Below, piece after piece: positions 29,424 to 55,685 of a DNA stretch of 64,000 nt. A model generated the notes under the pieces. That model had not been told where the DNA came from. It did not search any database and saw nothing but the letters and a program-made list of their open reading frames with translations. The position numbers were made by a program, and so were the translations under genes. The stretch covers positions 1 to 64,000 of the forward strand of contig NIVC01000677.1 of NCBI GenBank assembly GCA_002269645.1, read 5' to 3'. Every line of letters begins with the position of its first letter. The stretch's first letter is position 1. This DNA comes from Macrostomum lignano (lineage: Eukaryota).

Positions 29424-30251
29424 TCACTGTTCATTAGCCTTCTCCGTTTCCATGGGAACGTCCTTCAGCTGCGGCTGCTCCCGAGCTGCCGGAGCCTCGA
29501 ACGGCGCCTCGATGTACAGCCGGCCATCGTGGCTGAGCTTGCTCACCACCTGGTCCAGCTTGGTGCCGTCGGGCAGCTGGTAGATTCGCTCCAGCCGCTT
29601 GTGGACCCGCTGCCCGCCGGCCTCCTCCTTGTGCTCCGCCTCCACCAGCACGCAGTCGCCCTGCTGTCGCACGCGAATCTCGTCCGGCTTGAACTCGCGC
29701 ACCGACAGCTCCGCCTTGAACCGCTTGCTGCCATCGTCCGCCTCCACCAGCTGGCCGGACCCCTCAGACTGCAGGTCGCCTCGCAGCAGGCCGCGCAGCT
29801 CGTCCCACACGGAGTCGCCCTGCGGTTTCTGCTGCTGCTGCTGCTGCTCCTGCTGCTTCAGCTGCTGCTGCTTCTGCTGCTCCTTGAACGGCGCCTGCAG
29901 CACCAGCATGCCGTCCCGGGTGAAGCCGCTGTTCAGCTTCTCTGCGTCCACTTCCTCCGGCAGCTCCACCGTCCGCTTCACCTCCGTCACGTCCTCGCCG
30001 TTCTCCAGCCGCGCCACCACCCGCACCTTCCGCTCCTCCCGCTTCACCGACACGTCCTTCGGCGAGAAGCCGCGAAGGTCCACAGTCCGGCTCCACTGAC
30101 GCGGTCGCCTCGGACCTCTGTGCCGCAGCAGCTGCACCAGCGGGTCATACTCCGGCGTCAGCCAGTCGTCCAGCTCGCTCATGGCTGCCACTAGCGGCAG
30201 AGAGTGCGAGAACGGCGTGTACACGTTGCTCGGTGCGATCCACAGAGACAT
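29424..30251 (-). CDS. Small heat shock protein with two alpha-crystallin domains (p40/Tsp36-like), copy A, 275 aa
   Basis: RTVDLRGFSPKDVSVK...RTVELPEEVDAEKLNSGFTRDGMLVLQAP and FKAELSVREFKPDEIRVR...RIYQLPDGTKLDQVVSKLSHDGRLYIEAP. The start is the first ATG downstream of the TATA box; the longer ORF in the track runs through the promoter. Confidence 0.95.
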   Translation of the reverse strand: MSLWIAPSNVYTPFSHSLPLVAAMSELDDWLTPEYDPLVQLLRHRGPRRPRQWSRTVDLRGFSPKDVSVKREERKVRVVARLENGEDVTEVKRTVELPEEVDAEKLNSGFTRDGMLVLQAPFKEQQKQQQLKQQEQQQQQQKPQGDSVWDELRGLLRGDLQSEGSGQLVEADDGSKRFKAELSVREFKPDEIRVRQQGDCVLVEAEHKEEAGGQRVHKRLERIYQLPDGTKLDQVVSKLSHDGRLYIEAPFEAPAAREQPQLKDVPMETEKANEQ

Positions 30252-30373
30252 GCTTGCTGTGTCGCTTGTAAATGATAGAGTTTGGCGATTGATTCGCTTT
30301 GCTTGAGATTGCTTTGCTTGCGGTTGCTTTGTGTGCTCGAATCCTGTCTCACTCTCGGATCCAGCTGTCTCGC

Positions 30374-30444
30374 TTTTATAGACTGGCACTGAGGAAGCTT
30401 CTCGAATTTTCTCGCCCACTGACTCATTCTGGAAATTTCTAGAA
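30374..30444 (-). promoter_or_regulatory. Heat-shock promoter A: TATA box + two 4-unit HSEs + TGAGTCA (AP-1-like)
   Basis: TATAAAA (reverse complement at 30374-30380); GAAgcTTCtcGAAttTTC at 30394-30411; TTCtgGAAatTTCtaGAA at 30427-30444. Confidence 0.9.
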
Positions 30445-31029
30445 ATCAAGCCGCTAACCCAAATTTAGACAGCAAAAGTTCATATTTCTACTGTTAGTAG
30501 ATGAAACACAATTTTGTCAACGATAGCCTTTGTGCGGAAACTAGTAACAATCTATGTGCAATTTTATGTCATATTTTATTTTATTTTATTTTATTTTATA
30601 TTTTATCGCCAGTGAATGTCTATTAGCGCCCTCTCTGGTGGCTCTGGCTCTCGCGTCCCTCTCTTTCCAATTCTGTGGGTTTTGGCCAAAGACATAAGAA
30701 AAATCGACATCTTATGATTCCCAAATAAGCGGTCTTTCGCGTCCTCGGACCGATCCATTTTTAGGTATATTTTTAAAATAGCTATGAAAACTATCATCGT
30801 GTAGCAATAACCATATAGCATAGTTTCCTCGATCTTTAATGTCTATGGCAGTCTTTTTTGGCAGTATTTTTGTATTTTTGGCTGTCTTGGCAAGCCTTAA
30901 ACTGCAACATCAGTCTATGGGCCAGGCTGCAGTGAGCATCAGAGGAAAAGCAACTCAGGAGCCCCAGGCTGCGCTCCATCCCGCTGCCACTGCATAGAGC
31001 ACAATCAGCCCCGGCAGCGCACAGAAGCC

Positions 31030-33400: not shown

Positions 33401-33471
33401 TTCTAGAAATTTCCAGAATGAGTCAGTGGGCGAGAAAATTCGAGAAGCGTCCTCAGTGCCAGTCTATAAAA
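33401..33471 (+). promoter_or_regulatory. Heat-shock promoter B: HSE (4 units), TGAGTCA, HSE (3 perfect units), TATA box
   Basis: TTCtaGAAatTTCcaGAA at 33401-33418; GAAaaTTCgaGAAgcGTC at 33434-33451; TATAAAA at 33465-33471. Confidence 0.9.
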
Positions 33472-33593
33472 GCGAGACAGCTGGATCCGAGAGTGAGACA
33501 GGATTCGAGCACACAAAGCAACCGCAAGCAAAGCAATCTCAAGCAAAGCGAATCAATCGCCAAACTCTATCATTTACAAGCGACACAGCAAGC

Positions 33594-34421
33594 ATGTCTC
33601 TGTGGATCGCACCGAGCAACGTGTACACGCCGTTCTCGCACTCTCTGCCGCTCGTGGCAGCCATGAGCGAGCTGGACGACTGGCTGACGCCGGAGTATGA
33701 CCCGCTGGTGCAGCTGCTGCGGCACAGAGGTCCGAGGCGACCGCGTCAGTGGAGCCGGACTGTGGACCTTCGCGGCTTCTCGCCGAAGGACGTGTCGGTG
33801 AAGCGGGAGGAGCGGAAGGTGCGGGTGGTGGCGCGGCTGGAGAACGGCGAGGACGTGACGGAGGTGAAGCGGACGGTGGAGCTGCCGGAGGAAGTGGACG
33901 CAGAGAAGCTGAACAGCGGCTTCACCCGGGACGGCATGCTGGTGCTGCAGGCGCCGTTCAAGGAGCAGCAGAAGCAGCAGCAGCTGAAGCAGCAGGAGCA
34001 GCAGCAGCAGCAGCAGAAACCGCAGGGCGACTCCGTGTGGGACGAGCTGCGCGGCCTGCTGCGAGGCGACCTGCAGTCTGAGGGGTCCGGCCAGCTGGTG
34101 GAGGCGGACGATGGCAGCAAGCGGTTCAAGGCGGAGCTGTCGGTGCGCGAGTTCAAGCCGGACGAGATTCGCGTGCGACAGCAGGGCGACTGCGTGCTGG
34201 TGGAGGCGGAGCACAAGGAGGAGGCCGGCGGGCAGCGGGTCCACAAGCGGCTGGAGCGAATCTACCAGCTGCCCGACGGCACCAAGCTGGACCAGGTGGT
34301 GAGCAAGCTCAGCCACGATGGCCGGCTGTACATCGAGGCGCCGTTCGAGGCTCCGGCAGCTCGGGAGCAGCCGCAGCTGAAGGACGTTCCCATGGAAACG
34401 GAGAAGGCTAATGAACAGTGA
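33594..34421 (+). CDS. Small heat shock protein with two alpha-crystallin domains (p40/Tsp36-like), copy B, 275 aa
   Basis: Same protein sequence as copy A. Confidence 0.95.
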   Translation: MSLWIAPSNVYTPFSHSLPLVAAMSELDDWLTPEYDPLVQLLRHRGPRRPRQWSRTVDLRGFSPKDVSVKREERKVRVVARLENGEDVTEVKRTVELPEEVDAEKLNSGFTRDGMLVLQAPFKEQQKQQQLKQQEQQQQQQKPQGDSVWDELRGLLRGDLQSEGSGQLVEADDGSKRFKAELSVREFKPDEIRVRQQGDCVLVEAEHKEEAGGQRVHKRLERIYQLPDGTKLDQVVSKLSHDGRLYIEAPFEAPAAREQPQLKDVPMETEKANEQ

Positions 34422-37326: not shown

Positions 37327-40300
37327 GGCAGACAGACAGACAGGCAGGCAGGCAGACAGACAGACAGACAAACAGACAGGCAGCAGACAGACAGACAGAC
37401 ACACACATAGACAGGCAAATACTATGGCAGAATAGCATACTTGAAAGCCTTAGTCTTGCCGAGCACAATTCCAGCCAGCACGGATCCGAGAATTCCGGCA
37501 GCAATCATAGTGAATCCGGCCCAGCCTACTTGCTGCTCGATGTCAGTAGTCAGTGTAGCATTTACATCAGCTTTCTGAAATGTATGTCAACAAGAAATCA
37601 ACGGAATGCAGATTCAGTGTGGCCGATTACGCTATCAAGAAAATGTCTTCGGTGACGCGTTGGCTTGCTCACCCGCATCTCTGGCACAATAATCGGATTG
37701 AGCAGAGTTGACAAGGCATAGTAGGTGCCGGTGTTGAGACCTGCGCGTTTGTTTGAAGAAAAATAATAATCGGCAATACGGATGCGTCAGCCACACTCGG
37801 TTCGGAATGGATTATTAATCATATATTTCTACATGCATGCATCTGCTTCCAATTTCATGCCAGGCTGGAAAAGTCTGGAAAATCCATTAACTCTATTATT
37901 CTGCACTATTCCCTGGCCGTTGGATCAAACAGTAAAAAGTAAAAGTCCCTGGGGAACTTTTCTGCTAGTTTAAATTTCGTGTTGTATTTCATCAACTCGG
38001 ATCGAAGTGGAGAAGACCAAAGCATACGAAATTAGCTGAAAAGGCATTCGTTTTTTTCACGGTGTTCGACTCAGTTGATTCAAATGGCGAAAATGTAAAC
38101 TTCCTGTCTAGAGAGAGTTTCAGATTGCAACTCTGTCGCATAGCCATGTCACTATTCCTTCCTGTCTGTCCTCAGCATTACTGTCTGTCTGCAGCCTTCC
38201 TGTCCTCAGCATTAATGTCTGTCTGCAGCCTTCCTGTCCTCAGCATTACTGTCTGTCTGCAGCCTTCCTGTCCTCAGCATTACTGTCTGTCTGCAGCCTT
38301 CCTGTCCTCAGCATTACTGTCTGTCTGCAGCCTTCCTGTCCTCAGCATTACTGTCTGTCTGCAGCCTTCCTGTCCTCAGCATTACTGTCTGTCTGCAGCC
38401 TTCCTGTCCTCAGCATTACTGTCTGTCTGCAGCCTTCCTGTCCTCAGCATTACTGTCTGTCTGCAGCCTTCCTGTCCTCAGCATTACTGTCTGTCTGCAG
38501 CCTTCCTGTCCTCAGCATTACTGTCTGTCTGCAGCCTTCCTGTCCTCAGCATTACTGTCTGTCTGCAGCCTTCCTGTCCTCAGCATTACTGTCTGTCTGC
38601 AGCCTTCTTGTCCTCAGCATTACTGTCTGTCTGCAGCCTTCCTGTCCTCAGCAGTACTGTCTGTCTGCAGCCTTCCTGTCCGTCAGCAGCCAGCAACTCA
38701 CCATAGGAGACGGTCAGCAGCACGAATCCCGGATTCGACGCCAGACGCTTCAGCGACCCCGTGTAGGAGCTACCGACGCCGCCGCCGCCTCCGCCTCCGC
38801 CGCTGATGACCCCGCCGCCGCCGATCCGGGCGATGCTGGCAAGGCTGCCGAACGTCTGCGACGCCCGCACGGACGCTGGCGCTACCGGCGGCTGCTCGCC
38901 ATTCAGCAGCACCGCTGCATCCAACCGTCGGGCTATTGTCGGCGGAGTCGGCGGGCCCTCCTTGAACATGGCAACCACGAGGCCGAGCAGCAGGCCGGTG
39001 ACCGCGGCGCCGCCGATGTACATAGCCAGCAACTGGCCGCCCATGTCTTCGACGGTGCCGCGGGACACGAACAGCGGCGGCACAACAAAGCCGACTGCCA
39101 CGCCCAGCTGGTTGCCGAAGACGCCTAGCGCGGTGGCCGTTGGCAGCTCGTCGAGGCCGAACCAGGCGGCCGCCAGCGGGGCCGGCATGCCCAGGATGAA
39201 GTTCTGCGCGATGGCGCACAGAATCTGGGCGTGAGGGGGAGGGCATTTAGGAACGGGCATTAAGAAGCAAACTTTGAAATACACTGTCGAGATGGGCAGA
39301 TGAAAGAACTTACATATGTAAACTGCATTCAATAACTTTACTAACCATTCTCGGGAAATCTTGGGTCAAATGGCAGATATCAATGACTGCTAGACCATTA
39401 TCTGAGAGCGACAAAGCCTGGCTAGAAAATTCTGATCGCGGTCGTATTCTAGAGTTCCAGCTCGTATTCTAGAGTTCCAGCTCGTATTCTAGAGTTCCAG
39501 CTCGTATTCTACAGCTCGTATTCTAGAGTTCCAGCTCGTATTCTACAGCTCGTATTCTTGAGTTCCAGCTCGTATTCTAGAGTTCCATCTCGTATTCTAG
39601 AGTTCCATCTCGTATTCTAGAGTTCCAGCTCGTATTCTAGAGTTCCATCTCGTATTCTAGAGTTCCAGCTCGTATTCTAGAGTTCCAGCTCGTATTCTAG
39701 AGTTCCAGCTCGTATTCTAGAGTTCCAGCTCGTATTCTAGAGTTCCATCTCGTATTCTAGAGTTCCAGCTCGTATTCTAGAGTTCCAGCTCGTATTCTAG
39801 AGTTCCAGCTCGTATTCTAGAGTTCCAGCTCGTATTCTAGAGTTCCAGCTCGTATTCTAGAGTTCCAGCTCGTATTCTAGAGTTCCAGCTCGTATTCTAG
39901 AGTTCCAGCTCGTATTCTAGAGTTCCAGCTCGTATTCTAGAGTTCCAGCTCGTATTCTAGAGTTCCAGCTCGTATTCTAGAGTTCCAGCTCGTATTCTAG
40001 AGTTCCAGCTCGTATTCTAGAGTTCCAGCTCGTATTCTAGAGTTCCAGCTCGTATTCTAGAGTTCCAGCTCGTATTCTAGAGTTCCAGCTCGTATTCTAG
40101 AGTTCCAGCTCGTATTCTAGAGTTCCAGCTCGTATTCTAGAGTTCCAGCTCGTATTCTAGAGTTCCAGCTCGTATTCTAGAGTTCCAGCTCGTATTCTAG
40201 AGTTCCAGCTCGTATTCTAGAGTTCCAGCTCGTATTCTAGAGTTCCAGCTCGTATTCTAGAGTTCCAGCTCGTATTCTAGAGTTCCAGCTCGTATTCTAG

Positions 40301-42082
40301 AGTTCCAGCTCGTATTCTAGAGTTCCAGCTCGTATTCTAGAGTTCCAGCTCGTATTCTAGAGTTCCAGCTCGTATTCTAGAGTTCCAGCTCGTATTCTAG
40401 AGTTCCAGCTCGTATTCTAGAGTTCCAGCTCGTATTCTAGAGTTCCAGCTCGTATTCTAGAGTTCCAGCTCGTATTCTAGAGTTCCAGCTCGTATTCTAG
40501 AGTTCCAGCTCGTATTCTAGAGTTCCAGCTCGTATTCTAGAGTTCCAGCTCGTATTCTAGAGTTCCAGCTCGTATTCTAGAGTTCCAGCTCGTATTCTAG
40601 AGTTCCAGCTCGTATTCTAGAGTTCCAGCTCGTATTCTAGAGTTCCAGCTCGTATTCTAGAGTTCCAGCTCGTATTCTAGAGTTCCAGCTCGTATTCTAG
40701 AGTTCCAGCTATATACTTACCTGCCTCGTGTCATGCAAAATCATTCATTTTTTGTTGAGATTCGGGAAAAGTACAATGTCCAGTTTTACTTCAGCGGTCC
40801 TTTTTACAACTTTTTAAAACGAGGCCAAATCAATTAAGAACTCCTGATGTTCTACGAGCTAAAATTCATATTTCCGAGCACAAGATCGATGGCCTTGAAA
40901 AAATTCGTCAAGATAACTTCCTGTATTGCATGCACCACACGGTGCAACATTAGCAGCGACCAGGCACCGTAAAAGGCAGGCCTAGTGTTCTATAAATAGA
41001 TCACCGATGTAAAGGAAAAGGCGCACCCACAGATGCAGATTGGAAACATGAAAAGGACTCAATGCCCGCCTGCACAACCGGTCAGACTTTTTCCACTAAA
41101 GAAAAGTATGATTGTGTAGAAATTCAGACAGAAAGCAAAGAACAGCTCGTCAAAGACTCCATCAGTGCTCTCACCTGATGCAAGAACAACTCAACACAAA
41201 AACTCCATCAGTGATCTCACCTGGCTCAAGAACAACCCAACAAAGACTCCATCAGTGCTCTCACCTGGCTCAAGAACAACCCAACAAAGACTCCATCAGT
41301 GCTCTCACCTGGCTCAAGAACAACCCAACAAAGACTCCATCAGTGCTCTCACCTGGCTCAAGAACAACCCAACAAAGACTCCATCAGTGCTCTCACCTGG
41401 CTCAAGAACAACCCAACAAAGACTCCATCAGTGATCTCACCTGGCTCAAGAACAAGCAACAAAGACTCCATCAGTGCTCTCACCTGGCTCAAGAACAACC
41501 CAACAAAGACTCCATCAGTGCTCTCACCTGGCCCAAGAACAGCAGCCAGAAGCGGTCTGGCGCGGCAGCGAAGCACTTGACGAGAGCGCCAGCAAAGTTG
41601 AGCGCGGTCGCGCAGATCGCCGACACTCGCAGCCCGAATCGCTGCAGCAGCCAGGCGGCCGGCAGGATGAAGACCACATAGGCCAGCATGTAGATCATGG
41701 ACAGCCAGTCGATGGCCAGATTGGCCTCAGTGGAATCGGCCGGCAGAGATTCGTTATAATAGGACAGCACAACGTCAAACACGATGTTGAGGTGAATCCA
41801 CTGGTAGGCGCTGGACATTGAGTAGCTGCTGAACAGCAGCAGCACCAGCCAGCGCCGACGGTACAGGTGCGCCGCCGCCGCGCCGCCTCCGTTCTGGCCG
41901 GACTTCCTGACTGCCGACGACGACGCCTCGTCAACGTTGTCGTCTTCATCATCGTCGTCGACAAGCAGATTGTCGCCGCTGCTGCCACCGTTAGCTAACG
42001 GAAGCAGTTGGCTTTCGTCCCGGCGGTGCGGCTCATTGCTGCTTCTGCTGCTGCTGTTGTTGGCTTCGTCTGTCGAACTCAT
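35430..42082 (-). CDS. FLVCR: FLVCR-family MFS transporter (heme/choline/ethanolamine type), 7 exons, 562 aa
   Basis: Exons 41528-42082, 38702-39224, 37673-37740, 37441-37574, 35905-36121, 35697-35808 and 35430-35509 are phase-consistent GT-AG. Motifs: [89 protein letters not shown]. Confidence 0.95.
36165..37410. repeat. (GACA)n microsatellite with periodic CTAA interruptions
   Basis: Fills an FLVCR intron; the LSVC ORFs are artefacts. Confidence 0.97.
38160..38690. repeat. 34-bp intronic minisatellite (CAGCATTACTGTCTGTCTGCAGCCTTCCTGTCCT)
   Basis: About 15 tandem copies abutting the FLVCR exon 2 donor. Confidence 0.95.
39450..40710. repeat. 20-bp highly homogeneous minisatellite (AGTTCCAGCTCGTATTCTAG)
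   Basis: About 60 copies, essentially invariant after ~39750; lies in FLVCR intron 1. Confidence 0.97.
41150..41540. repeat. 44-bp tandem repeat spanning the FLVCR exon 1 splice donor
   Basis: The minus-strand unit is TTCTTGAGCCAG|GTGAGAGCACTGATGGAGTCTTTGTTGGGTTG, about 9 copies. Confidence 0.93.
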
Positions 42083-43199: not shown

Positions 43200-44170
43200 G
43201 TAACAGCCAGTGAGGCAGCTAGTAACAGCCAGTGAGTGAGGCAGCTAGTAACAGCCAGTGAGTGAGGCAGCTAGTAACAGCCAGTGAGTGAGGCAGCTAG
43301 TAACAGCCAGTGAGTGAGGCAGCTAGTAACAGCCAGTGAGTGAGGCAGCTAGTAACAGCCAGTGAGTGAGGCAGCTAGTAACAGCCAGTGAGTGAGGCAG
43401 CTAGTAACAGCCAGTGAGTGAGGCAGCTAGTAACAGCCAGTGAGTGAGGCAGCTAGTAACAGCCAGTGAGTGAGGCAGCTAGTAACAGCCAGTGAGTGAG
43501 GCAGCTAGTAACAGCCAGTGAGTGAGGCAGCTAGTAACAGCCAGTGAGTGAGGCAGCTAGTAACAGCCAGTGAGTGAGGCAGCTAGTAACAGCCAGTGAG
43601 TGAGGCAGCTAGTAACAGCCAGTGAGTGAGGCAGCTAGTAACAGCCAGTGAGTGAGGCAGCTAGTAACAGCCAGTGAGTCAGGCAGCTAGTAACAGCCAG
43701 TGAGGCAGCTAGTAACAGCCAGTGAGTGAGGCAGCTAGTAACAGCCAGTGAGTGAGGCAGCTAGTAACAGCCAGTGAGGCAGCTAGTAACAGCCAGTGAG
43801 TGAGGCAGCCAGTAACAGCCAGTGAGTGAGGCAGCTAGTAACAGCCAGTGAGTGAGGCAGCTAGTAACAGCCAGTGAGTGAGGCAGCTAGTAACAGCCAG
43901 TGAGTGAGGCAGCTAGTAACAGCCAGTGAGGCAGCTAGTAACAGCCAGTGAGTGAGGCAGCCAGTAACAGCCAGTGAGTGAGGCAGCTAGTAACAGCCAG
44001 TGAGTGAGGCAGCTAGTAACAGCCAGTGAGTGAGGCAGCTAGTAACAGCCAGTGAGTGAGGCAGCTAGTAACAGCCAGTGAGGCAGCTAGTAACAGCCAG
44101 TGAATGAGGCAGCCAGTAACAGCCAGTGAGTGAGGCAGCTAGTAACAGCCAGTGAGGCAGCTAGTAACAG
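43200..44170. repeat. 26/22-bp minisatellite (GTGAGGCAGCTAGTAACAGCCAGTGA)
   Basis: Tandem units. Confidence 0.96.
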
Positions 44171-45004
44171 CTAGCGGTAGCAGGAAGAAGTAAGCAGTGA
44201 CAAAGGCGTCGGAAAAAATAGCTAAATAAATTAATAACGACTGAAGACTACGTTGACATAAAATGTAATTTCTGAAACGCCAAGAAACAAATCAGTATTG
44301 AAGATTCGAGCGCATGACTCAATTTAAATAGGCTTTATTATTCCACATTCTAGTGCAGCAGACGAATGAGTAGTATGTATGGCGCAAAAAAAATCCTGAA
44401 GCTGCTAGAATGTAACAGACTTCAGTAGAGTGAGCAAAAATTATTGTTTTCTGTATCTTTTTGAGCAACTCCCACGGACCGGTAGTTATACTGTAAAAAC
44501 GTAATTACAAATTTCAACAGACTTATTGTAGGCAATCAATTAGCAAACTCTGGTTAAGTAAAAAATTCCGTAATGTCGTAAAAAATGGCTACACTACTTA
44601 CAGTAGCCAAAATACGAGTATATCTGCGTGAAAGCACTGGAAAATTGGAAGATCAGCAATCAAACAAAATATGTTAAAATGTAGCACAAATGTAGTAGAA
44701 TTGGCTGGCGTTGTGACCAAGCTGTACAAGGTGGGAGGTAATATTCTCTGCAGATATGCGGCCACCAACAAATAATACGGTTTATCTAATCAACAAATTT
44801 ATGCTCAAGAATTAATAGACTAAGCATGCAGCCATGCTGTTATTAAACACTATTGGCGTCCACATTTCACAACTGCGTGTATTCAATAAAAATTGCGGCA
44901 CAAAAATAACAAAGGACTGTTGCCTTGGATACTGGCAGCTGATTGACACTGCGGAGCTCTCAGATACGTACTCCTTGTAGCTGATTGAACTAATATGTAT
45001 ACAG

Positions 45005-45056
<52 letters not shown>

Positions 45057-45093
45057 TAGACAGACAGGCAGACAGACAGACCGACAGACACTA

Positions 45094-45126
<33 letters not shown>

Positions 45127-45165
45127 CACAGACAGACAGACAGACACACAGACAGACAGACAGGC

Positions 45166-45198
<33 letters not shown>

Positions 45199-45358
45199 CA
45201 CAGACAGACAGACAGGCAGACAGACAGACAGGCAGACAGACAGACAGACACACAGACACTAAGACAGACAGACAGACAGACACTAAGACAGACAGACAGA
45301 CACACAGACAGACAGACAGACAGACACACAGACACACAGACAGACAGACAGACACACA
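45005..45358. repeat. (GACA)n microsatellite
   Basis: Same CTAA-interrupted pattern as 36165-37410. Confidence 0.95.
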
Positions 45359-45504
45359 GGTATTTCAGCGCCTGCTTCAAGCCTCGGATCGCCGTGTTCC
45401 TAAATTAGCAATCTAGAGTTGGCATTTCGAGCCCCAGCAGAGCAGGCAGTCAGCCAAATCCGAGATAGGCGCGATCAAAAACAGCAAAACAAAGGAAAGT
45501 AAAA

Positions 45505-47732
45505 TCAGGCCGAGTCGCCAAGCAGCGCCGTGATGCCCTGGCAGCAGCCGATAGCCTGCATCGCCCGCACCAGCTGCTGACAGTGCAGCGGCTGCAGCAG
45601 CTGCAGTCCCTCATACAGTAGGCCTGCCGCGGGTTGCCCCCTGGCCTGGCCGCGTTCTAGCAGCTGACGCAGCTCGCCAGGCAGCATCTCCAGCAGCAGC
45701 AGCAGCGGCTCGAAGACCGCCTGAACAGCCGGGCAGCAGCAGAGCCGGCCGAGCTGCTCCGGTGTGACCAGCTTGTCTGGCGAGATGGACAGCTTGGCCA
45801 GATTGACGGCCGTCATGGAGGCCGGGCCCAAGTCGGTGGAGGAGAACTCGGGCTCCGCAGGCTCCGGGACAGGGACAATTGAGTCCGTCTCGGTTGTCTC
45901 AAGCTCCATCTTAAGCAGCTGACTGACGGATTCCCCGGGCAGGCAGCCGTTCCAGGCTTCGATTGCCCGATCGAACGGCGGCCGATCTGTCACCACGTAT
46001 TGGGCGACATTCGCCCAGCTGGACGCTTGAGTTGCCGCCGGCCAGCGAGCTCGGATTCGGTTGCTAAGCAGGCTGGTCAACTGTTTGGAGCTGAGCTGTC
46101 TGCGCGGACAGGCCAGAGTGAAGACTTCGAAGCAAGACAGCCCGTAGGCGAGTCGATCCTGATCCAAGCAGGCCGGCTGCGGTCCAATTACGCCTGAGTC
46201 AAAGCCGCCAATCTAGTAGGGGCAAATAGGTAAACGGCGGGAGTAATTATGAACGAGTTGCCTCGTCAGCTAATAAGTTGCTTATTGATCTTGTTTATTG
46301 AATAAAAAGGGATCAACTATGACCAAATTGCCTAAGCTTCCACCTCATTGTCTTGTAAGTTTTATCAGTTTATCTAACAAGCAGTTAACTATTCTTCACT
46401 TAGCAGAAATTCTCACGCCTTCTCACCTTGGCCTGCAGACTGGCTGTTATTAAAATGTTTCTGGAACTAAAACTGCCGTGACAAATTGGCGGCTTCTCAA
46501 CGCTGTGCAGGTGATGAAAGCCTTCGGCAATTTGGCGCAGCCAGAGCGACAGCAGAAGCGGACTCACCGGCTGGCGCTGCGAAATGGGAACAAGTTTGAT
46601 TGAGCAATACTGGCCACGAAACAGATAATAAAACCCATCTTAGATTAAAGGTAAAGCATTTTATATAAAATTTGAAATCTCGATTAGGGATTTGACATCC
46701 CGATTAAGGATTTGACATCCCGATTAAGGATTTGACATCCCGATTAAGGATTTCACATCCCGATTAAGGATTTGACATCCCGATTGAGGATTTCACATCC
46801 CGATTGAGGATTCGACCTACCGATTGAGGATTTGACATTTCGATTGGGGGAGGGGGTTGACATCCCGATTGGGGATTTGACATCTCTATTGGGGATTTGA
46901 CATCCCGATGGAGGATTCGACATCCCGATGGGGATTTGACATCTCGATTGGGGAATTGACATCTCGATTGGGGAATTGACATCTCGATTGGGGAATTGAC
47001 ATCTCGATTGGGGAATTGACATCTCGGTTGGGGAATTGACATCTCGATTGAGGAATTGACATCTCGATTGAGGATTTGACGATGGGGGATTTGAAATCCC
47101 CATTGAGGATTTGACATTTCTATTTTGGATTTGACAACGCGATCTCAGGTTTTCGGTGCCACAATCTAAAAGCTCACAATTGTACTGTTTAAAAGTACAC
47201 TCACCCGATCTGACTGAGCCAGGCTGAACTCCAAAACATTGCCATGCTCACAGTGCTCCATCACAATGCCCATCAACATGACATTTTGCTCCATATAAAA
47301 AGCCACTGAGCTGAGGAGTGCTGAGTGGTTTGCTTTAATTTTTTTCAATATATTAAACTGATTACTTATCAGCTTAGTGGCCGTTGTGCTGCAATGTTAG
47401 CAAATTGGTTTTTTATTAGAAACAAAGAATCTGAAAAGTGGAAAAATCATAAAGCTGACAGAGTCTGAGCAAGTGTCATACATCTGTACGCTTGTAGAAC
47501 TAGATGTAGGCTTCATTTTCTTCAAAAAGTAGCGCTGATCAGTGGAGTCTTCCTTCCATTTGCAGCAAGCATATGAGAAGTAGCCGCTATCTGAAATGTG
47601 TAAAAAATATAAAGTTAAAATCAACAGATACATAGATAGACAGGTAATTCTAAAAGAAAAAGGCATACCAATAGGTGCAGCCTCTAGGTCACGAAGGTTA
47701 TCTTGATTGACAGTAATTTTACTTGATAGCAT
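45505..47732 (-). CDS. Pseudokinase (TKL/RIPK-like) with a putative C-terminal death domain, 5 exons, 404 aa
   Basis: Exons 47669-47732, 47482-47590, 47205-47388, 46427-46576 and 45505-46212 are phase-consistent and total 1215 nt. Subdomains read IDSGYFS, YFLKK, IVMEHCEHGNV, LRQIAEGFHHLHSVEKPPICHGSFSSRNILI, AKIGGFD, DRLAYGLSCFEVFT. The helical tail is FEPLLLLLEMLPGELRQL...GLLYEG...QQLVRAMQAIG. Confidence 0.8.
46685..47125. repeat. ~20-bp intronic minisatellite (GATTTGACATCCCGATTAAG / GAATTGACATCTCGATTGGG)
   Basis: Fills pseudokinase intron 3. Confidence 0.93.
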
Positions 47733-47981
47733 GATTCATAAATTTAAAGAGATGGTGCATCAGTATAGAAACAATTAATTTAATCAATTTATTAGTTTAA
47801 ATTCAGTTATTGGTTTATTTTTTCATTTTAAATATTTATCCCCTGTTACTAGCAATTTGTAAATTAGCATAATAGTAGTACCTGGTACTCGTACAATAGT
47901 GCAATGGTTTTATTCCTTGCCTTAGTGGCACTTATTGAACAGGTAGCATTGAACTATGACAACTATTTTGCGCATGCTTGG

Positions 47982-48137
47982 GCGCAACCTTGGGATTCAC
48001 TCGGCCGTTTCTATTGGCAACACACGCATGTAAGTCGCTATTGGACGGAAAAGTAGTCACGTGACTGGTATCAGCCAATAGCGACTTACATGTGTGTGTT
48101 GCCAATAGAAACGGCCGGGTGATTCCCAAAGTTGCGC
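47982..48137. mobile_element. Hairpin MITE (about 63-bp arms around an AGTCACGTGACT core)
   Basis: GCGCAACCTTGGGATTCACTCGGCCGTTTCTATTGGCAACACAC...CTATTGG is inverted as CCAATAG...GTTGCGC; a decayed second copy lies at ~49333-49453. Confidence 0.8.
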
Positions 48138-48290
48138 ATGCATGATTTTGCGGAATAACTGTATCGCTTTTAATGTACAATCGCTCTCTATGTACATCGT
48201 TGACTCAGTCCTAACTCGCATAAATAAAGCGAGCACTGCCTCACGGGGCCTATGCTGATTTTTGCACTGCCAAATAGCAAGTGTTACAAG

Positions 48291-49200
48291 TGGTAGCAGA
48301 GATCAGAATGACAAAGGGCATCCACCGCGCGATTCTGAGAACTTTTTGGGCTCTGGCAACTTTAATGAGTGGCTGCAGCGGTTTGAGCTGTGTGCAGCAG
48401 CCAACAAGTGGACAAACGACAAACACTTGCATCTGCCAACAATTCTGGATGGCGAGGCTCTGGCAGTCTTCCTTGAGCTTGGCGACGAGGACAAGAGCGA
48501 CTACAGTCAAGTGTGACCAAAGCATTAACGCAGTGATTAACCGAGGCCTTTCAGCCAGACAGCCAGCACTTCTCAGCGCTGGAGGCATTCGAGATCCAGA
48601 AGCTGCTGCCTGGTGAACCTCCTCGGCTGTTCCTCTACCGCCTGAGGCAGCTGCTCAAGGACGCTGGAATCAGCAACAAGAATGCCACGGACAGCATGCT
48701 GACCCATCACTTCATCCGCGGACTGCTGGCGGATGTCAGCACTGACGCGTCAGTCAAGACACCTGCTACTGGAGGTGCCTTCTGCCACCACGGATGAAAG
48801 CCAGTCAACCTCTCGCAGCAGCAGCCAGAACTGCTTGCGGCAGTGCTGAGACTGCAGATGTGAGGGCTATGGTCAACTTGCTGCAGGTGACAGTCCAAGA
48901 CCTGGCGGCGAAGCTAAGCTCAGAGGCTTCAGACTCCTGCATGGTTCGCAGTGCGAGGAGACAGCACGAGGTGACCTGCTGGAATGGCAACCACTGTGGC
49001 CACATTGCCAGGAACTGCAAGCAGCCATTGGGAAATGGCACTGGCCAGGGTGGAGCCCACAACCCTGGCCAGTTCTGAGCACAGGGCCCCAGCATGAGTG
49101 GATTGTTTTGGGGTGCATAGGGGGCAGGCTGGACAGTGCTTGAGTAGTGCAGCAACTTATTCTGCATTTGCTGCACCTTTGGCAGCTAGCCGGTCCACTA
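48291..49200 (+). mobile_element. Truncated gypsy-type relic: PBS + gag fragments
   Basis: ...GTTACA AG TGGTAGCAGAG (PBS, tRNA-iMet type) at 48291; FLGSGNFNEWLQRFELCAAANKW...LPTILDGEALAVFLEL; degenerate knuckle TCWNGNHCGHIARNC. Confidence 0.75.
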
Positions 49201-52431: not shown

Positions 52432-54334
52432 GGATTGTAGTACACCTTAATTTCGTAATTTAAATTGGTGCCAACTCGAGGCGGGTGTTAAGTAAAGCAA
52501 AGCAGTCGCATCGCAATGTAATAATACTCGTATATTTTCGTTTCGTCCAATACTTTATATTCGTAAATTTATATCAGTTGAATTTCATCGCCTTAGCTCG
52601 ATGGTGAGTCCAATAAATGCTGAATCATAGCTCGAACTGTTACTGGCTATGCTTTAGAGTGTGCCTAGTAAGCGCGAAGCTGTGCAAGCTCGTGATTGGC
52701 CAGTAAAGGCTCAAAGTCAAATTCGGTGTCCTGCCTCCGTTCTTGCTACAAGATTAATATTTAATTTGACTGACTTGATTTGGGTCATATGAAATGCATG
52801 TAAGAAAACTTCTTTCAAAATGTTTTTAAGCGAATATTAATAGTCTTTTCAAAGCTATTGTTTCAATGAATGATAGTTTGTTGCAGATAGGCCTAAACTA
52901 TTTCGCATTTTTAACAAGCTTACATGGTCACTTTTTTAGTTAGTTTGTCACGAACGAACTAGTTAAGCAAGTGTGATAGCGGGGACTACCCCTCGTGACT
53001 GTTTTCTGGTTTCTGGACTTGCTACGTCATTGCCATCTGATGGGGACTGATGCCCCACCTGTTGCCCCTTTGCTGGCCTCTCGTGCCCCTCCTTGGCCCC
53101 TACCTTTGGCGCCCCTTTTTGCCTTCGTTTGGCCTGTGTTTTTTGAAAGATTGAGTCCAGTTTCGCGGAGAAGATTTCGATGGATTTCTGTTTCGCGGAG
53201 AGGATTTTGATGGATTTCTGTTCCGCGGAGAGGATTTCGATGGATTTCTGTTTGATGGATTTTGAGAAAATTTGGATGATGGGATTCGGGTCGTGGGATT
53301 CAGCTGATGGAGTTCAGGGAATGGAATTCCGGTGATGGGATTTCTTCCCTTTTCTCCTCCAACCGAGGAGTTGGCCTCGTATTGTATAATACTGATAAAA
53401 TATACTCAGCAGCAGTCAACTTGTACATGTACATGTATTCTCAACAACATTAAAAAGTCGCCACCTTTGGGAGTGCGCAGTAAATTCTAGCTCATGCAGT
53501 ACTGACTTTTGAGTGGGACGCAACTTGCGCCACGCGACGCAGAGTTGGGCTGGGTGAGGAGGGATTGAGAAGAGCGGAGGGCGAAGATTGGATGGATTGA
53601 AGCTTCCTCCTGGTTTTCATAGTTTTTTCAAGCATTTTTTAATATCAAAATAGACGCATGATAGACGCATGGTCAAAAGACACTGCTCGCTGGGACACAG
53701 GGTGGCGACTTTTCAATGTTGCTGAGTATATACGTACATATTGAGTCACATTCATAATATACACAACCCCGCTGACCATGAAAATTTTCAACTGCTTTAG
53801 CTATCTGCGCTGTGAAAATGCACTGCTTTGAAGCGCTTGCCAGACGACCTTGACAATAAAAAGGCCGCTGGGCTGTGCGGCTGTGGCTATTTTTAGAGCA
53901 AAATATTCTATCGCTGCATGCTGTTTCTTGGGAATGGTGACGCGTCAACTTAAAATGATGCGTGCAATTTGGTGTAATGTACATCAGCGCATGCAGATGA
54001 GGGGGGCTATTTGTGAAAGTGCGCGCACGAGCTGAGTGTGAGCTGAGAGCTGAGAAAAGAGATGAGTCAGCAGTTCTCACAGCTAAACTAGTTACCGCTT
54101 GCAGTAGTTATGCGAAATTTCTTCGCCTTGGACACAGTCGCCTTAGCTACGTGTATACATGTACTTAATACTCATTATGCTTAAGGCAGTGCACATGTAA
54201 CTATACTATAGACCTGCACAAAAAGTATGAATGCCTGTGTAACACGTGTTAGCTATCGCTTCCATTGTACATGTATAATCTACTTGAAATATAAAAGTTG
54301 AGACTACATGTACGAGCTATGGTGTGAAATGCGT

Positions 54335-55685
54335 TGTGCTATCAGAGAGGTTGCGGTGTCTGAGACGTTGTGGTGTCTGAGACGTTGTGGTGTCAGAGAC
54401 GTTGTGGTGTCTGAGACGTTGTGGTATTAGAGAGGTTGTGGCGTCAGAGACGTGATGTCTGAGACGCTGTTGCGTCAGAGACGTTGTGGTATCAGAGACG
54501 TTGTGGTGTCTGAGACGTTGTGGTATCAGAGAGGTTGCGGTGTCTGAGACGTTGTGGTGTCTGAGACGTTGTGGTATCAGAGAGGTTGCGGTATCTGAGA
54601 CGTTGTGGTGTCTGAGACGTTGTGGTGTCAGAGACGTTGTGGTCTCTGAGACGTGGTGTGTCAGAGACGTTGTGATGTCAGAGAGGTTGTGGTGTCAGAG
54701 AGACATTGTGGTGTCAGAGGTTGTAGTGTCTGAGACTTTGTGGTGTCTGAGACGTTGTGGTATCAGAAATTTTGGTGTCAGAGACGTGATGTGTCAGAGA
54801 CGTTGTGGTGTCAGAGAGGTTGTGGTGTCTGAGACGTTGTGGTGTCAGAGAGGTTGTGGTGTCAGAGGTTGTGGTGTCTGAGACGTTGTGGTGTCAGAGA
54901 GGTTGTGGTGTCAGAGAGGTTGGGGTGTCTGAGATGTTGTGGTGTCTGAGACGTTGTGGTATTAGAGAGGTTGTGGCGTCAGAGACGTGATGTCTGAGAC
55001 GCTGTTGCGTCAGAGACGTTGTGGTATCAGAGACGTTGTGGTGTCTTTGTGGTATCAGAGACGTTGGGGTGTCTGAGACGTTGTGGTATCAGAGAGGTTG
55101 CGGTGTCTGAGACGTTGTGGTGTCTGAGACGTTGTGGTGTCTGAGACGTTGTGGTATCAGAGATTTTGGTGTCAGAGACGTTGTGGTGTCTAAGACGTTG
55201 TGGTGTCTGAGACGTTGTGGTGTCTAAGACGTTGTGGTATCAGAGATTTTGGTGTCAGAGACGTGATGTGTCAGAGACGTTGTGGTGTCAGAGAGGTTGT
55301 TGTGTCAGATACGTTGTGGTGTCTGAGACGTTGTGGCATCAAAGAGGTCGTGGTGTCAGAGACGTTGTGGTGTCTGAGACGTTGTGGCATCAAAGAGGTC
55401 GTGGTGTCAGGGACGTTGTGGTATCAAAGAGGTTGTGGTGTCAGAGTCGTTGTGGTGTCTGAGACGTTGTGGTATTAGAGATTTTGGTGTCAGAGACGTT
55501 GTGGTGTCAGAGGTTGTGGTGTCTGAGACGTGATGTCTGAGACGCTGTGGTATCAGAGATGCTGTGGTGTCAGAGAGTTTGTGGTGTCTGAGACGTTGTG
55601 GTATCTGAGACGTTGTGGTGTCTGAGACGTGATGTCTGAGACGCTGTGGTGTCAGAGAGATTGAGAGAGGTTTAGGTGTCAGAGA
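54335..55685. repeat. Degenerate ~17-bp minisatellite (GAGACGTTGTGGTGTCT/CA)
   Basis: Tandem variant units. Confidence 0.95.

What the first reader, a model, noticed from the sequence alone, without database searches (positions are those of the whole stretch)
45505..47732. Kinase-dead RIPK1-like gene (pseudokinase + putative death domain) hidden across five exons
Seen: five phase-consistent exons splice into a 404-aa protein; the ORF track shows only fragments of it. The kinase fold keeps the beta3 Lys (YFLKK) and NIL, but HRD reads HGS, DFG reads GFD and the activation segment is very short. The last ~85 aa (TPEQLGRL...FEPLLLLLEMLPGELRQL...GLLYEG...CQQLVRAMQAIG..ITALL) follow the six-helix death-domain pattern. 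Known: kinase plus C-terminal death domain is the RIPK1 architecture, and loss of the HRD and DFG aspartates normally abolishes catalysis. Inference: this is a scaffold or decoy for death-fold signalling in a flatworm. No RHIM core is visible.
Basis: partly seen in the sequence, partly recalled or inferred. Interest (0 to 1): 0.78.

Follow-up and report, generated by a model that had tools for sequence, protein, structure and literature searches.

The report
Degenerate orphan flatworm pseudokinase, no death domain
This is a real, already-deposited five-exon gene of the flatworm Macrostomum lignano that encodes a catalytically dead, very divergent kinase-derived protein, but its tail shows no detectable death domain and nothing ties it specifically to RIPK1.

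Summary
The five-exon, 404-aa minus-strand gene is real. All four introns are GT..AG, and the product equals GenBank PAA78578.1 (BOX15_Mlig032705g2, "hypothetical protein", Macrostomum lignano), which comes from an RNA-seq-guided annotation. The motif readings hold: beta3 Lys K45 and catalytic-loop Asn kept, HRD read as HGS, DFG read as GFD, and a very short activation segment. In addition the alphaC Glu is Gln and the Gly-loop is degenerate, so the protein is a pseudokinase.

The RIPK1/death-domain reading is not supported. Pfam, an exhaustive search of 1.84 billion proteins, a PDB search and calibrated profile tests all fail to find a death domain (hhalign probability 0.5%, against 87-99% for true DDs). 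There is no RHIM. The best structural-database matches are MLKL pseudokinases and RIPK2, and RIPK1 is not among the best 60. The structure predictions were too poor to use.

The tail is Leu/Gln/Ala/Cys-rich, and 38% of its DNA is CTG/CAG-type repeat. The only death-fold hint is a twilight CARD-like score (22%, p about 0.005). Confident kinase homology stops at about residue 175; the C-lobe is not statistically recognisable. No homologue exists outside M. lignano, and the second genomic copy carries a transposon in the last exon. This is an ordinary orphan pseudokinase of low interest.

The parts
47669..47732 (-). Exon 1 (64 nt): ATG at 47732-47730, codons 1-21 plus the first base of codon 22. 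An in-frame TGA lies two codons upstream of the ATG.
   Evidence: donor gtatgc
47482..47590 (-). Exon 2 (109 nt): degenerate Gly-loop (DSGYFS) and the beta3 strand YFLKK. K45 is encoded at 47522-47520.
   Evidence: acceptor tttcag, donor gtatga
47205..47388 (-). Exon 3 (184 nt): alphaC (the Glu is replaced by Q68), beta4-5 and the hinge (IVMEHCEHGNV).
46427..46576 (-). Exon 4 (150 nt): alphaE (LRQIAEGFHHLH) and the catalytic loop ICHGSFSSRNILI. HGS is encoded at 46480-46472; the catalytic-loop Asn159 is kept.
   Evidence: aligned to MLKL ..HGKIRSSNFLV and RTKC8 HRDLAARNVLL
45505..46212 (-). Exon 5 (708 nt including the stop; GC 64%, GC3 0.76): IGGFD (GFD at 46206-46198), an alphaF-like DRLAYG, an unrecognisable C-lobe remnant, the linker and the tail.
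45508..45765 (-). 38% of the DNA lies in (CWG)n repeats. It is predicted helical at low confidence. There is no DD, PYD or DED signal and only a faint CARD-like score.
45766..45864 (-). Linker, aa 286-318: Ser/Pro/Ala/Glu-rich and predicted non-helical.
45803..45810 (-). GCCGTCAA (codons 304-306): the empty target site in this copy. In the other genomic copy (L001) a ~2.9 kb DNA transposon sits here, flanked by this 8-bp duplication.
   Evidence: P0005 reads into the insert
46670..47136 (.). 20-bp minisatellite (about 23 copies) that fills most of intron 3. It is one unit shorter in the other copy.

Best explanation
The locus is a transcribed, lineage-restricted, highly degenerate kinase-derived gene of Macrostomum lignano: a pseudokinase of tyrosine-kinase-like (TKL) flavour. 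Only the N-lobe through the catalytic loop and the DFG position (aa ~30-175) is still recognisably kinase. It keeps the beta3 Lys and the catalytic-loop Asn. It has lost the Gly-loop glycines, the alphaC Glu (now Q68), the HRD Asp (HGS), the DFG Asp (GFD), about 20 residues of activation segment and the APE motif. Phosphotransfer is therefore excluded (inference from established kinase mechanism). Everything downstream (229 aa, all in the GC-rich exon 5) is at best a badly eroded C-lobe, followed by a Ser/Pro linker and a Leu/Gln/Ala/Cys-rich extension largely encoded by CTG/CAG-type low-complexity DNA. If the protein is functional, the most likely mode of action is non-catalytic: a binding or scaffold protein that uses the retained kinase surface and the amphipathic helical tail. 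This step is inferred, not shown. It does not contain a demonstrable death domain and is not a RIPK1 homologue.
For: The gene model was reproduced and equals the deposited PAA78578.1 from an RNA-seq-guided annotation. The Pfam kinase hit is E=4.8e-13, but it covers only profile positions 19-146 of 258. Motif states come from alignments to MLKL, RTKC8 and STK33 and a regex scan. Three word-index searches of 5.8e9 proteins, plus one exhaustive search of 1.84e9 with the tail, return only M. lignano copies. DD, PYD and DED profiles score at background while positive controls score high. A validated C-lobe profile scores the segment 16.75 against 130-205 for true C-lobes and a shuffle maximum of 23.9. 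The tail DNA is 38% (CWG)n, and the repeat occurs both in frame (LLLLL, LQLLQ) and out of frame (CCC, CC). The ORF stays open for 404 codons across four canonical introns despite identity to any kinase being so low that the best PDB hit is 29 bits. This argues for past purifying selection on the reading frame (inference).
Against: There is no independent evidence of present function. The two genomic copies are 99-100% identical in exons and introns, so dN/dS cannot be computed. One copy carries a transposon in exon 5. No expression or phenotype data were found under either gene ID. AF2 could not fold the protein (pLDDT 29.7 full length, 51.6 tail), so the fold is untested. A CARD-like twilight score (hhalign probability 22%, empirical p about 0.005) means a degenerate death-fold module is not excluded.
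Confidence: 0.55

Rival explanations
1. Decaying relic: the gene is a kinase duplicate on its way to becoming a pseudogene. It is transcribed but has no selected function, and its C-terminal half is drifting into low-complexity sequence.
For: The C-lobe is statistically unrecognisable. The activation segment is deleted. The tail is dominated by (CWG)n repeat DNA. There are no homologues outside the species. The other genomic copy has a 2.9 kb transposon inside exon 5, and a deposited model of it terminates within the insert.
Against: The 404-codon ORF is intact with four canonical introns in this copy. The kinase core is far diverged yet free of stops, which is unlikely under long neutral drift (inference). 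The gene is included in an RNA-seq-based annotation.
Confidence: 0.25
2. RIPK2-like architecture: the tail is a degenerate CARD, so the protein is a kinase-dead kinase-CARD adaptor or decoy that works by homotypic CARD-CARD recruitment.
For: hhalign of the tail against a Pfam-validated 14-member CARD profile gives probability 22%, P=9.4e-4, score 22.6 over 49 columns. That is above 200 shuffles (max 16.8), above 185 natural ORF decoys (max 16.1), above the reversed decoys (about 10), and above all but 1 of 300 block shuffles. It is also higher than a genuine divergent CARD, MAVS (17.1). RIPK2 kinase domains are among the PDB sequence matches (about 22 bits).
Against: The score is far below 13 of 14 true CARDs (47-83). 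The alignment needs a 14-residue gap and lacks helices 1, 5 and 6. The Pfam CARD model gives no hit at E<=10. With a plain HMM, eight random ORF fragments of the window outscore exon 5. Foldseek on the weak model found no death fold. After correction for four families tested, p is about 0.02.
Confidence: 0.12
3. One reading: a RIPK1-like pseudokinase with a C-terminal death domain that acts as a scaffold or decoy in death-fold signalling.
For: The order 'kinase then helical C-terminal module' resembles RIPK1. About six short helices are predicted in aa 319-399 (low confidence). By eye, 'QLVRAMQAIG..ITALL' resembles DD helices 5-6.
Against: There is no Death hit in Pfam. An HMM of validated DDs scores the tail 0.9 bits against 17.7-72 for left-out DDs. 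hhalign gives 0.47% against 87-99%. Exhaustive phmmer and the PDB search find no DD protein. There is no RHIM. RIPK1 is absent from the best 60 PDB kinase matches. A weak MyD88-DD pairwise hit elsewhere in the protein (aa 218-271, E=0.27) vanished at the profile level (8.9, below the shuffle mean).
Confidence: 0.04
4. MLKL-related pseudokinase: the HGx/GF[DE] motif pair and the top PDB hits reflect common descent with the MLKL pseudokinase domain.
For: The best PDB sequence matches are MLKL pseudokinase domains (6vc0 E=4.9e-6, 29 bits; human MLKL 5e-5). Their HGK/GFE aligns with HGS/GFD here.
Against: The scores are low and only about 7 bits above RIPK2 and plant RLKs. There is no room for the N-terminal four-helix-bundle executioner domain or brace, because the kinase starts at about residue 10 and an in-frame stop precedes the ATG. 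MLKL has been reported absent from protostomes except bdelloid rotifers (PMC11476962). The shared substitutions can arise convergently in dead kinases (inference).
Confidence: 0.03

Closest known systems
MLKL pseudokinase domain (vertebrate necroptosis effector)
   Same: It gives the highest-scoring solved-structure sequence match. Both are TKL-type pseudokinases that keep the beta3 Lys and the catalytic-loop Asn but read HGx for HRD and GF[E/D] for DFG.
   Different: There is no N-terminal four-helix bundle or brace. The activation segment, which is the RIPK3 phospho-acceptor site in MLKL, is almost entirely missing. This protein has a C-terminal extension that MLKL lacks. Similarity is only 25-29 bits.
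RIPK1 (kinase - RHIM intermediate domain - death domain)
   Same: The kinase-like module is N-terminal and a helical module is C-terminal.
   Different: There is no detectable death domain and no RHIM. The kinase part is not closest to RIPK1. The protein is catalytically dead and its C-lobe is unrecognisable.
RIPK2 (kinase - CARD)
   Same: The domain order is the same. RIPK2 kinase domains are among the PDB matches (about 22 bits), and the tail gives a twilight CARD-like hhalign score.
   Different: The CARD similarity is not significant by database standards. The catalytic residues are lost. No orthology has been shown.
Other TKL-group pseudokinases (IRAK2/IRAK3, ILK, plant NFR5)
   Same: They show the same loss of catalytic-loop and DFG residues with a retained fold-defining core, and they act as non-catalytic scaffolds (established knowledge). 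NFR5 is among the top PDB hits.
   Different: IRAKs carry an N-terminal death domain, and ILK and NFR5 have other partner domains. None shares this tail. Here even the C-lobe is eroded.

Membership tests
Protein kinase superfamily (Pfam PF07714/PF00069) | Significant profile match to the N-lobe through the catalytic loop and DFG region | tested here: met
   PK_Tyr_Ser-Thr E=4.8e-13 (49.5 bits, cutoff 23.1), aa 32-173 on profile positions 19-146 of 258; Pkinase E=1.6e-9.
Protein kinase superfamily (Pfam PF07714/PF00069) | Recognisable C-lobe (activation segment/APE, alphaF-alphaI) | tested here: inconclusive
   The Pfam match stops at DFG. A validated C-lobe profile gives score 16.75, probability 1.5%, alphaF only, against 130-205 for true C-lobes and a shuffle maximum of 23.9. 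The landmark test gives 9/20 against a null of 6.5, p=0.14. There is no APE, and only 13 aa separate GFD from Asp188.
Pseudokinase (catalytically inactive kinase homologue) | Loss of one or more of the beta3 Lys, the HRD Asp and the DFG Asp | tested here: met
   HRD reads HGS and DFG reads GFD. The alphaC Glu is Q68. There is no GxGxxG. The same residues appear in all deposited copies. Activity itself was not assayed.
RIPK1 | C-terminal death domain (PF00531) | tested here: not met
   No Pfam hit at E<=10. HMM score 0.9 bits against 17.7-72 for left-out DDs. hhalign 0.47% against 87-99%. Exhaustive and PDB searches negative. The fold test could not be used because the models were too poor (pLDDT 51.6; Foldseek best E=2.1).
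RIPK1 | RHIM core ([IV]Q[IVLC]G) in an intermediate domain | tested here: not met
   The regex scan finds none.
RIPK1 | Kinase domain closer to RIPK1 than to other TKL kinases | tested here: not met
   The best 60 PDB matches include MLKL, RTKC8, NFR5, ZAK, RIPK2, FERONIA and RIPK3 but no RIPK1 chain. No phylogeny was possible.
Death domain (PF00531) anywhere in the protein | Family-level profile similarity | tested here: not met
   Full protein against the DD profile: score 12.7, probability 0.2%. aa 176-300: 8.9. The pairwise MyD88 hit at E=0.27 is not reproduced by the profile.
CARD (PF00619) / RIPK2-type architecture | Profile similarity of the tail to CARD | tested here: inconclusive
   Pfam gives no hit. 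hhalign gives 22%, P=9.4e-4, above nearly all decoys but below 13 of 14 true CARDs. A plain HMM does not separate it from window noise.
MLKL | N-terminal four-helix-bundle executioner domain plus brace, upstream of the pseudokinase | tested here: not met
   The kinase begins at about aa 10. An in-frame TGA lies two codons upstream of the ATG, with no acceptor in between. Deposited transcripts start at the same place.
IRAK/Pelle | N-terminal death domain preceding the kinase | tested here: not met
   There is no N-terminal extension. No IRAK chain is among the best 60 PDB matches.

The most novel reading that the evidence does not exclude
The tail is a strongly eroded CARD (death-fold) module. 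That would make this a kinase-dead RIPK2-like kinase-CARD adaptor or decoy in a free-living flatworm, evidence that a RIPK2-type death-fold signalling component exists or once existed in Platyhelminthes.
Probability: 0.12. Interest if true: 0.55.

Novelty: new member of a known kind. Interest (0 to 1): 0.2.

Why it matters
If the death-domain reading had held, this would have been a RIPK1-type necroptosis/NF-kB scaffold in a flatworm, which would bear on the evolutionary origin of death-fold kinase signalling. The evidence instead points to an orphan, degenerate pseudokinase of the kind common in animal kinomes. Its value is mostly cautionary. Leu/Gln-rich sequence encoded by CTG/CAG repeat DNA readily imitates the heptad-like pattern of death-fold helices by eye. 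And the shared dead motifs (HGx, GF[D/E]) pull an unrelated pseudokinase toward MLKL in similarity searches. The faint CARD-like signal is the only lead worth a cheap follow-up once Macrostomum orthologues are available.

Tried and rejected
1. Three word-index homologue searches (full length at E<=1e-3 and E<=10, and the kinase region alone) returned only M. lignano copies. The second was effectively wasted.
2. An exhaustive phmmer search with the post-kinase region found only the same species' models.
3. AF2 on the full length with a 3-sequence alignment gave pLDDT 29.7, and on the tail alone 51.6 with pTM 0.33. Both are too poor to use. Foldseek against the PDB with the tail model gave no hit better than E=2.1 and no death fold. 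I treat this as uninformative, not as negative evidence.
4. dN/dS between the two genomic copies is impossible, because exons and introns are 99-100% identical.
5. P0003 (46% identity) looked like a diverged paralogue. However, it consists of 100%-identical islands separated by unrelated stretches, as a frameshifted model of the same gene would, and its locus is not on record, so it was not used for evolutionary inference.
6. Expression look-ups by gene ID in full text and in the supplements of four M. lignano papers found nothing.
7. A weak MyD88 death-domain hit to aa 218-271 raised the idea that the DD lies where the C-lobe should be. I rejected this because the DD profile, which includes MyD88, scores that segment below the shuffle mean.
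8. The idea that aa 176-285 is a clean kinase C-lobe could not be confirmed.
9. A hidden exon in intron 4 that might restore the activation segment was ruled out by reading: the intron is 214 nt and full of stops, and the deletion lies inside exon 5.
10. A search of the window for any other DD-, CARD- or kinase-coding exon found none.

Full report
**What is there.** On the minus strand of window 45505-47732, five exons (47732-47669, 47590-47482, 47388-47205, 46576-46427, 46212-45505) join in phase through four GT..AG introns into a 404-codon ORF. The mechanical ORF list shows only fragments of it.

It is not new, however. The product is identical, apart from one extra upstream codon, to GenBank PAA78578.1 (BOX15_Mlig032705g2, "hypothetical protein, partial") on contig NIVC01000677.1 of the Macrostomum lignano Mlig_3_7 assembly. 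That annotation was built from RNA-seq and transcriptome assemblies (PMC5730564), which indirectly supports all four junctions. The flatworm guess was right.

A second genomic copy (NIVC01000921.1, PAA74822.1) is 99-100% identical in exons and introns. It carries a ~2.9 kb insertion in exon 5 after codon 306, with terminal inverted repeats (CATACATGCGCAACT...) and an 8-bp target-site duplication (GCCGTCAA). This is a non-autonomous DNA transposon. A UniRef model of that allele reads into the insert and terminates (P0005).

**Kinase part.** Pfam recognises a protein kinase domain (PK_Tyr_Ser-Thr E=4.8e-13; Pkinase 1.6e-9). The match covers only aa 32-173, that is profile positions 19-146 of 258, from beta2 to the DFG position.

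- Alignments to solved structures put K45 (YFLKK) on the beta3 Lys and Q68 on the alphaC Glu.
- They put H152-G153-S154...N159 on HRD...N, and G172-F173-D174 on DFG.
- There is no GxGxxG, HRD, DFG or APE.
- The alphaF-like DRLAYG begins 13 residues after GFD, where kinases normally have about 33.
- The same residues occur in every deposited model from both contigs and in the UniRef models.

By established kinase mechanism the protein cannot catalyse phosphotransfer, so it is a pseudokinase.

**How much of the kinase is left.** The segment after GFD (aa 176-285) fits C-lobe landmarks by eye: Asp188/Gly193/Glu198/Pro205, R225-x-P227 and DRPPF at roughly canonical spacing. I could not show this statistically.

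- A Pfam-validated nine-member C-lobe profile scores it 16.75 (probability 1.5%, alphaF only). True C-lobes left out of the profile score 130-205, and the shuffle maximum is 23.9.
- A landmark-column test gave 9/20 matches against a null of 6.5 (p=0.14).

Confident homology thus ends five residues into exon 5. That exon is also compositionally distinct: GC 64% and GC3 0.76, against GC 39-54% and GC3 0.51 in exons 1-4.

**Relatives.** Three searches of 5.8 billion proteins (full length twice, then the kinase region alone) return only M. lignano models. Among solved structures the best matches are MLKL pseudokinase domains (29 and about 26 bits), whose HGK/GFE aligns with HGS/GFD. After them come a choanoflagellate RTK, plant NFR5, ZAK, RIPK2 (about 22 bits), FERONIA and RIPK3. 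No RIPK1 or IRAK chain is among the best 60.

The MLKL resemblance is weak and partly driven by the shared dead motifs. The protein has no N-terminal region that could hold MLKL's four-helix bundle, because the kinase starts at about residue 10 and an in-frame TGA precedes the ATG. MLKL has been reported absent from protostomes other than bdelloid rotifers (PMC11476962). I class the kinase as an unplaceable TKL-like pseudokinase.

**The tail (aa 319-404), the crux of the finding.**

- *Sequence searches.* Pfam gives no Death, CARD, DED or PYRIN hit even at E<=10. An exhaustive phmmer search of 1.84 billion representatives with aa 263-404 finds only M. lignano copies. The PDB gives only an insignificant SAMTOR match.
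- *Structure prediction.* AF2 failed (full length pLDDT 29.7; tail alone 51.6, pTM 0.33). Both runs predict about six short helices, but Foldseek finds nothing (best E=2.1, no death fold). The fold test is therefore uninformative.
- *Calibrated profile tests.* I wrote reference DD (11), CARD (7, then 14), PYD (6) and DED (4) domains from memory and validated every set against Pfam.
- *Death domain.* An HMM of the DDs scores the tail 0.9 bits, while left-out true DDs score 17.7-72. hhalign gives probability 0.47% and score 12.4, which 11% of shuffles reach, while left-out DDs give 87-99%.
- *PYD and DED.* These profiles and all reversed decoys score 8-12.

The death-domain claim is not supported at the level of sequence or profile.

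**A residual CARD-like hint.** Only the CARD profile stands out: probability 22%, P=9.4e-4, score 22.6 over 49 columns (aa 315-377, with a 14-residue gap).

- In its favour, the score exceeds 200 shuffles (max 16.8), 185 natural ORF decoys from the window (max 16.1), the reversed decoys, and 299 of 300 block shuffles that keep local structure. It also exceeds the genuine but divergent MAVS CARD (17.1).
- Against it, the score is far below the other 13 true CARDs (47-83). With a plain HMM, eight random window ORFs beat exon 5. After correcting for four families tested, p is about 0.02.

I treat this as a lead (about 12%) that the architecture is RIPK2-like rather than RIPK1-like, not as a finding.

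**A simpler explanation for the tail's look.** The tail is 23% Leu, 13% Gln, 10% Gly, 10% Ala and 7% Cys. 38% of its DNA lies in (CWG)n>=2 repeats, against 0-4% in the rest of exon 5. CTG+CAG trinucleotides number 35, against 9.6 +/- 2.6 in shuffles. The repeat appears in frame (CTG x5 = LLLLL; LQLLQ; QQL) and out of frame (TGCTGCTGC = CCC; CC), which points to DNA-level low complexity rather than a conserved protein pattern. Such sequence is helix-prone and readily mimics death-fold heptad-like spacing.

**A false trail.** The post-GFD segment gave the MyD88 death domain as its only PDB hits (E=0.27), on the W..LA / LL.AW..G.SV..LL pattern. The DD profile, which includes MyD88, scores that segment 8.9, below the shuffle mean of 10.6, so the hit is chance.

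**Verdict.** The RIPK1/death-domain interpretation fails its own stated refutation test ("no death-fold similarity for the tail") as far as sequence methods can tell.

- The best explanation (0.55) is an orphan, degenerate TKL-like pseudokinase with a repeat-derived helical extension. If it is functional it acts non-catalytically; that step is inferred.
- The main rival (0.25) is that it is a decaying relic, given the eroded C-lobe, the absence of homologues and the transposon-disrupted sister copy.
- No selection test was possible, because the only other copies are nearly identical.
- Interest is low.

Noticed in passing
L001 11909-14785 (NIVC01000921.1); equivalent empty site at window 45803-45810: The sister genomic copy of the gene has a ~2.9 kb insertion inside exon 5 with terminal inverted repeats (CATACATGCGCAACT.. 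/ ..AGTTGCGCATGTATG) and an 8-bp target duplication GCCGTCAA. It has no long non-repetitive ORF, so it is a non-autonomous DNA transposon. The deposited gene model treats it as an intron, and a UniRef model (A0A1I8HF26) reads into it and stops.
   Followed up: partly
window 47982-48044 and 48075-48137: A 63-nt inverted repeat, 94% complementary with a 30-nt spacer, lies about 250 bp upstream of the start codon. It looks MITE-like, and its outer ends (..CATGCGCAAC..) resemble the termini of the transposon found in the sister copy's exon 5.
   Followed up: partly
window 46670-47136 (intron 3): A 20-bp minisatellite (ATTTGACATCCCGATTGAGG, about 23 copies) fills most of intron 3. The sister copy differs by one unit.
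   Followed up: partly
window 45006-45359: A long (AGAC)n microsatellite (about 44 units of the 8-bp period) begins about 150 bp downstream of the stop codon.
   Followed up: no
window 38166-38688, 39442-40710, 41151-41541, 43209-44171, 54332-55658: There are five large minisatellite arrays with periods of 34, 20, 44, 26 and 17 bp and up to 80 copies. Four of them lie within or next to the downstream MFS_1 transporter gene (about 42706-35505, minus strand). Array lengths differ between the two genomic copies.
   Followed up: no
window 29424-30449 (-) and 33426-34421 (+): Two long ORFs in divergent orientation each carry Hsp20/alpha-crystallin domains (E about 1.5e-24, two stretches each). They appear to be an inverted duplicate pair of small heat-shock protein genes.
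   Followed up: no
window 45505-47732: There is a sharp compositional step inside one gene: exons 1-3 are 39-42% GC, exon 4 is 54% and exon 5 is 64% (GC3 0.51 for exons 1-4 against 0.76). Confident kinase homology ends almost exactly at the exon 4/5 boundary. Whether exon 5 has a different history was not resolved.
   Followed up: partly
window 48262-49078 (+): ORFs just upstream of the gene include a CCHC-like motif (CWNGNHCGHIARNC), reminiscent of a retroelement Gag zinc knuckle. Pfam gave no hit, so at best this is a degenerate remnant.
   Followed up: partly
window 47733-47735 and gene IDs Mlig032705g2 / Mlig006697g1: Both deposited models are flagged 5'-partial and start within 3 nt of the ATG. 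The g1/g2 suffixes suggest the kinase-like gene shares a transcriptional unit with a neighbouring gene, probably the downstream MFS transporter. Trans-splicing or operon status was not checked.
   Followed up: no
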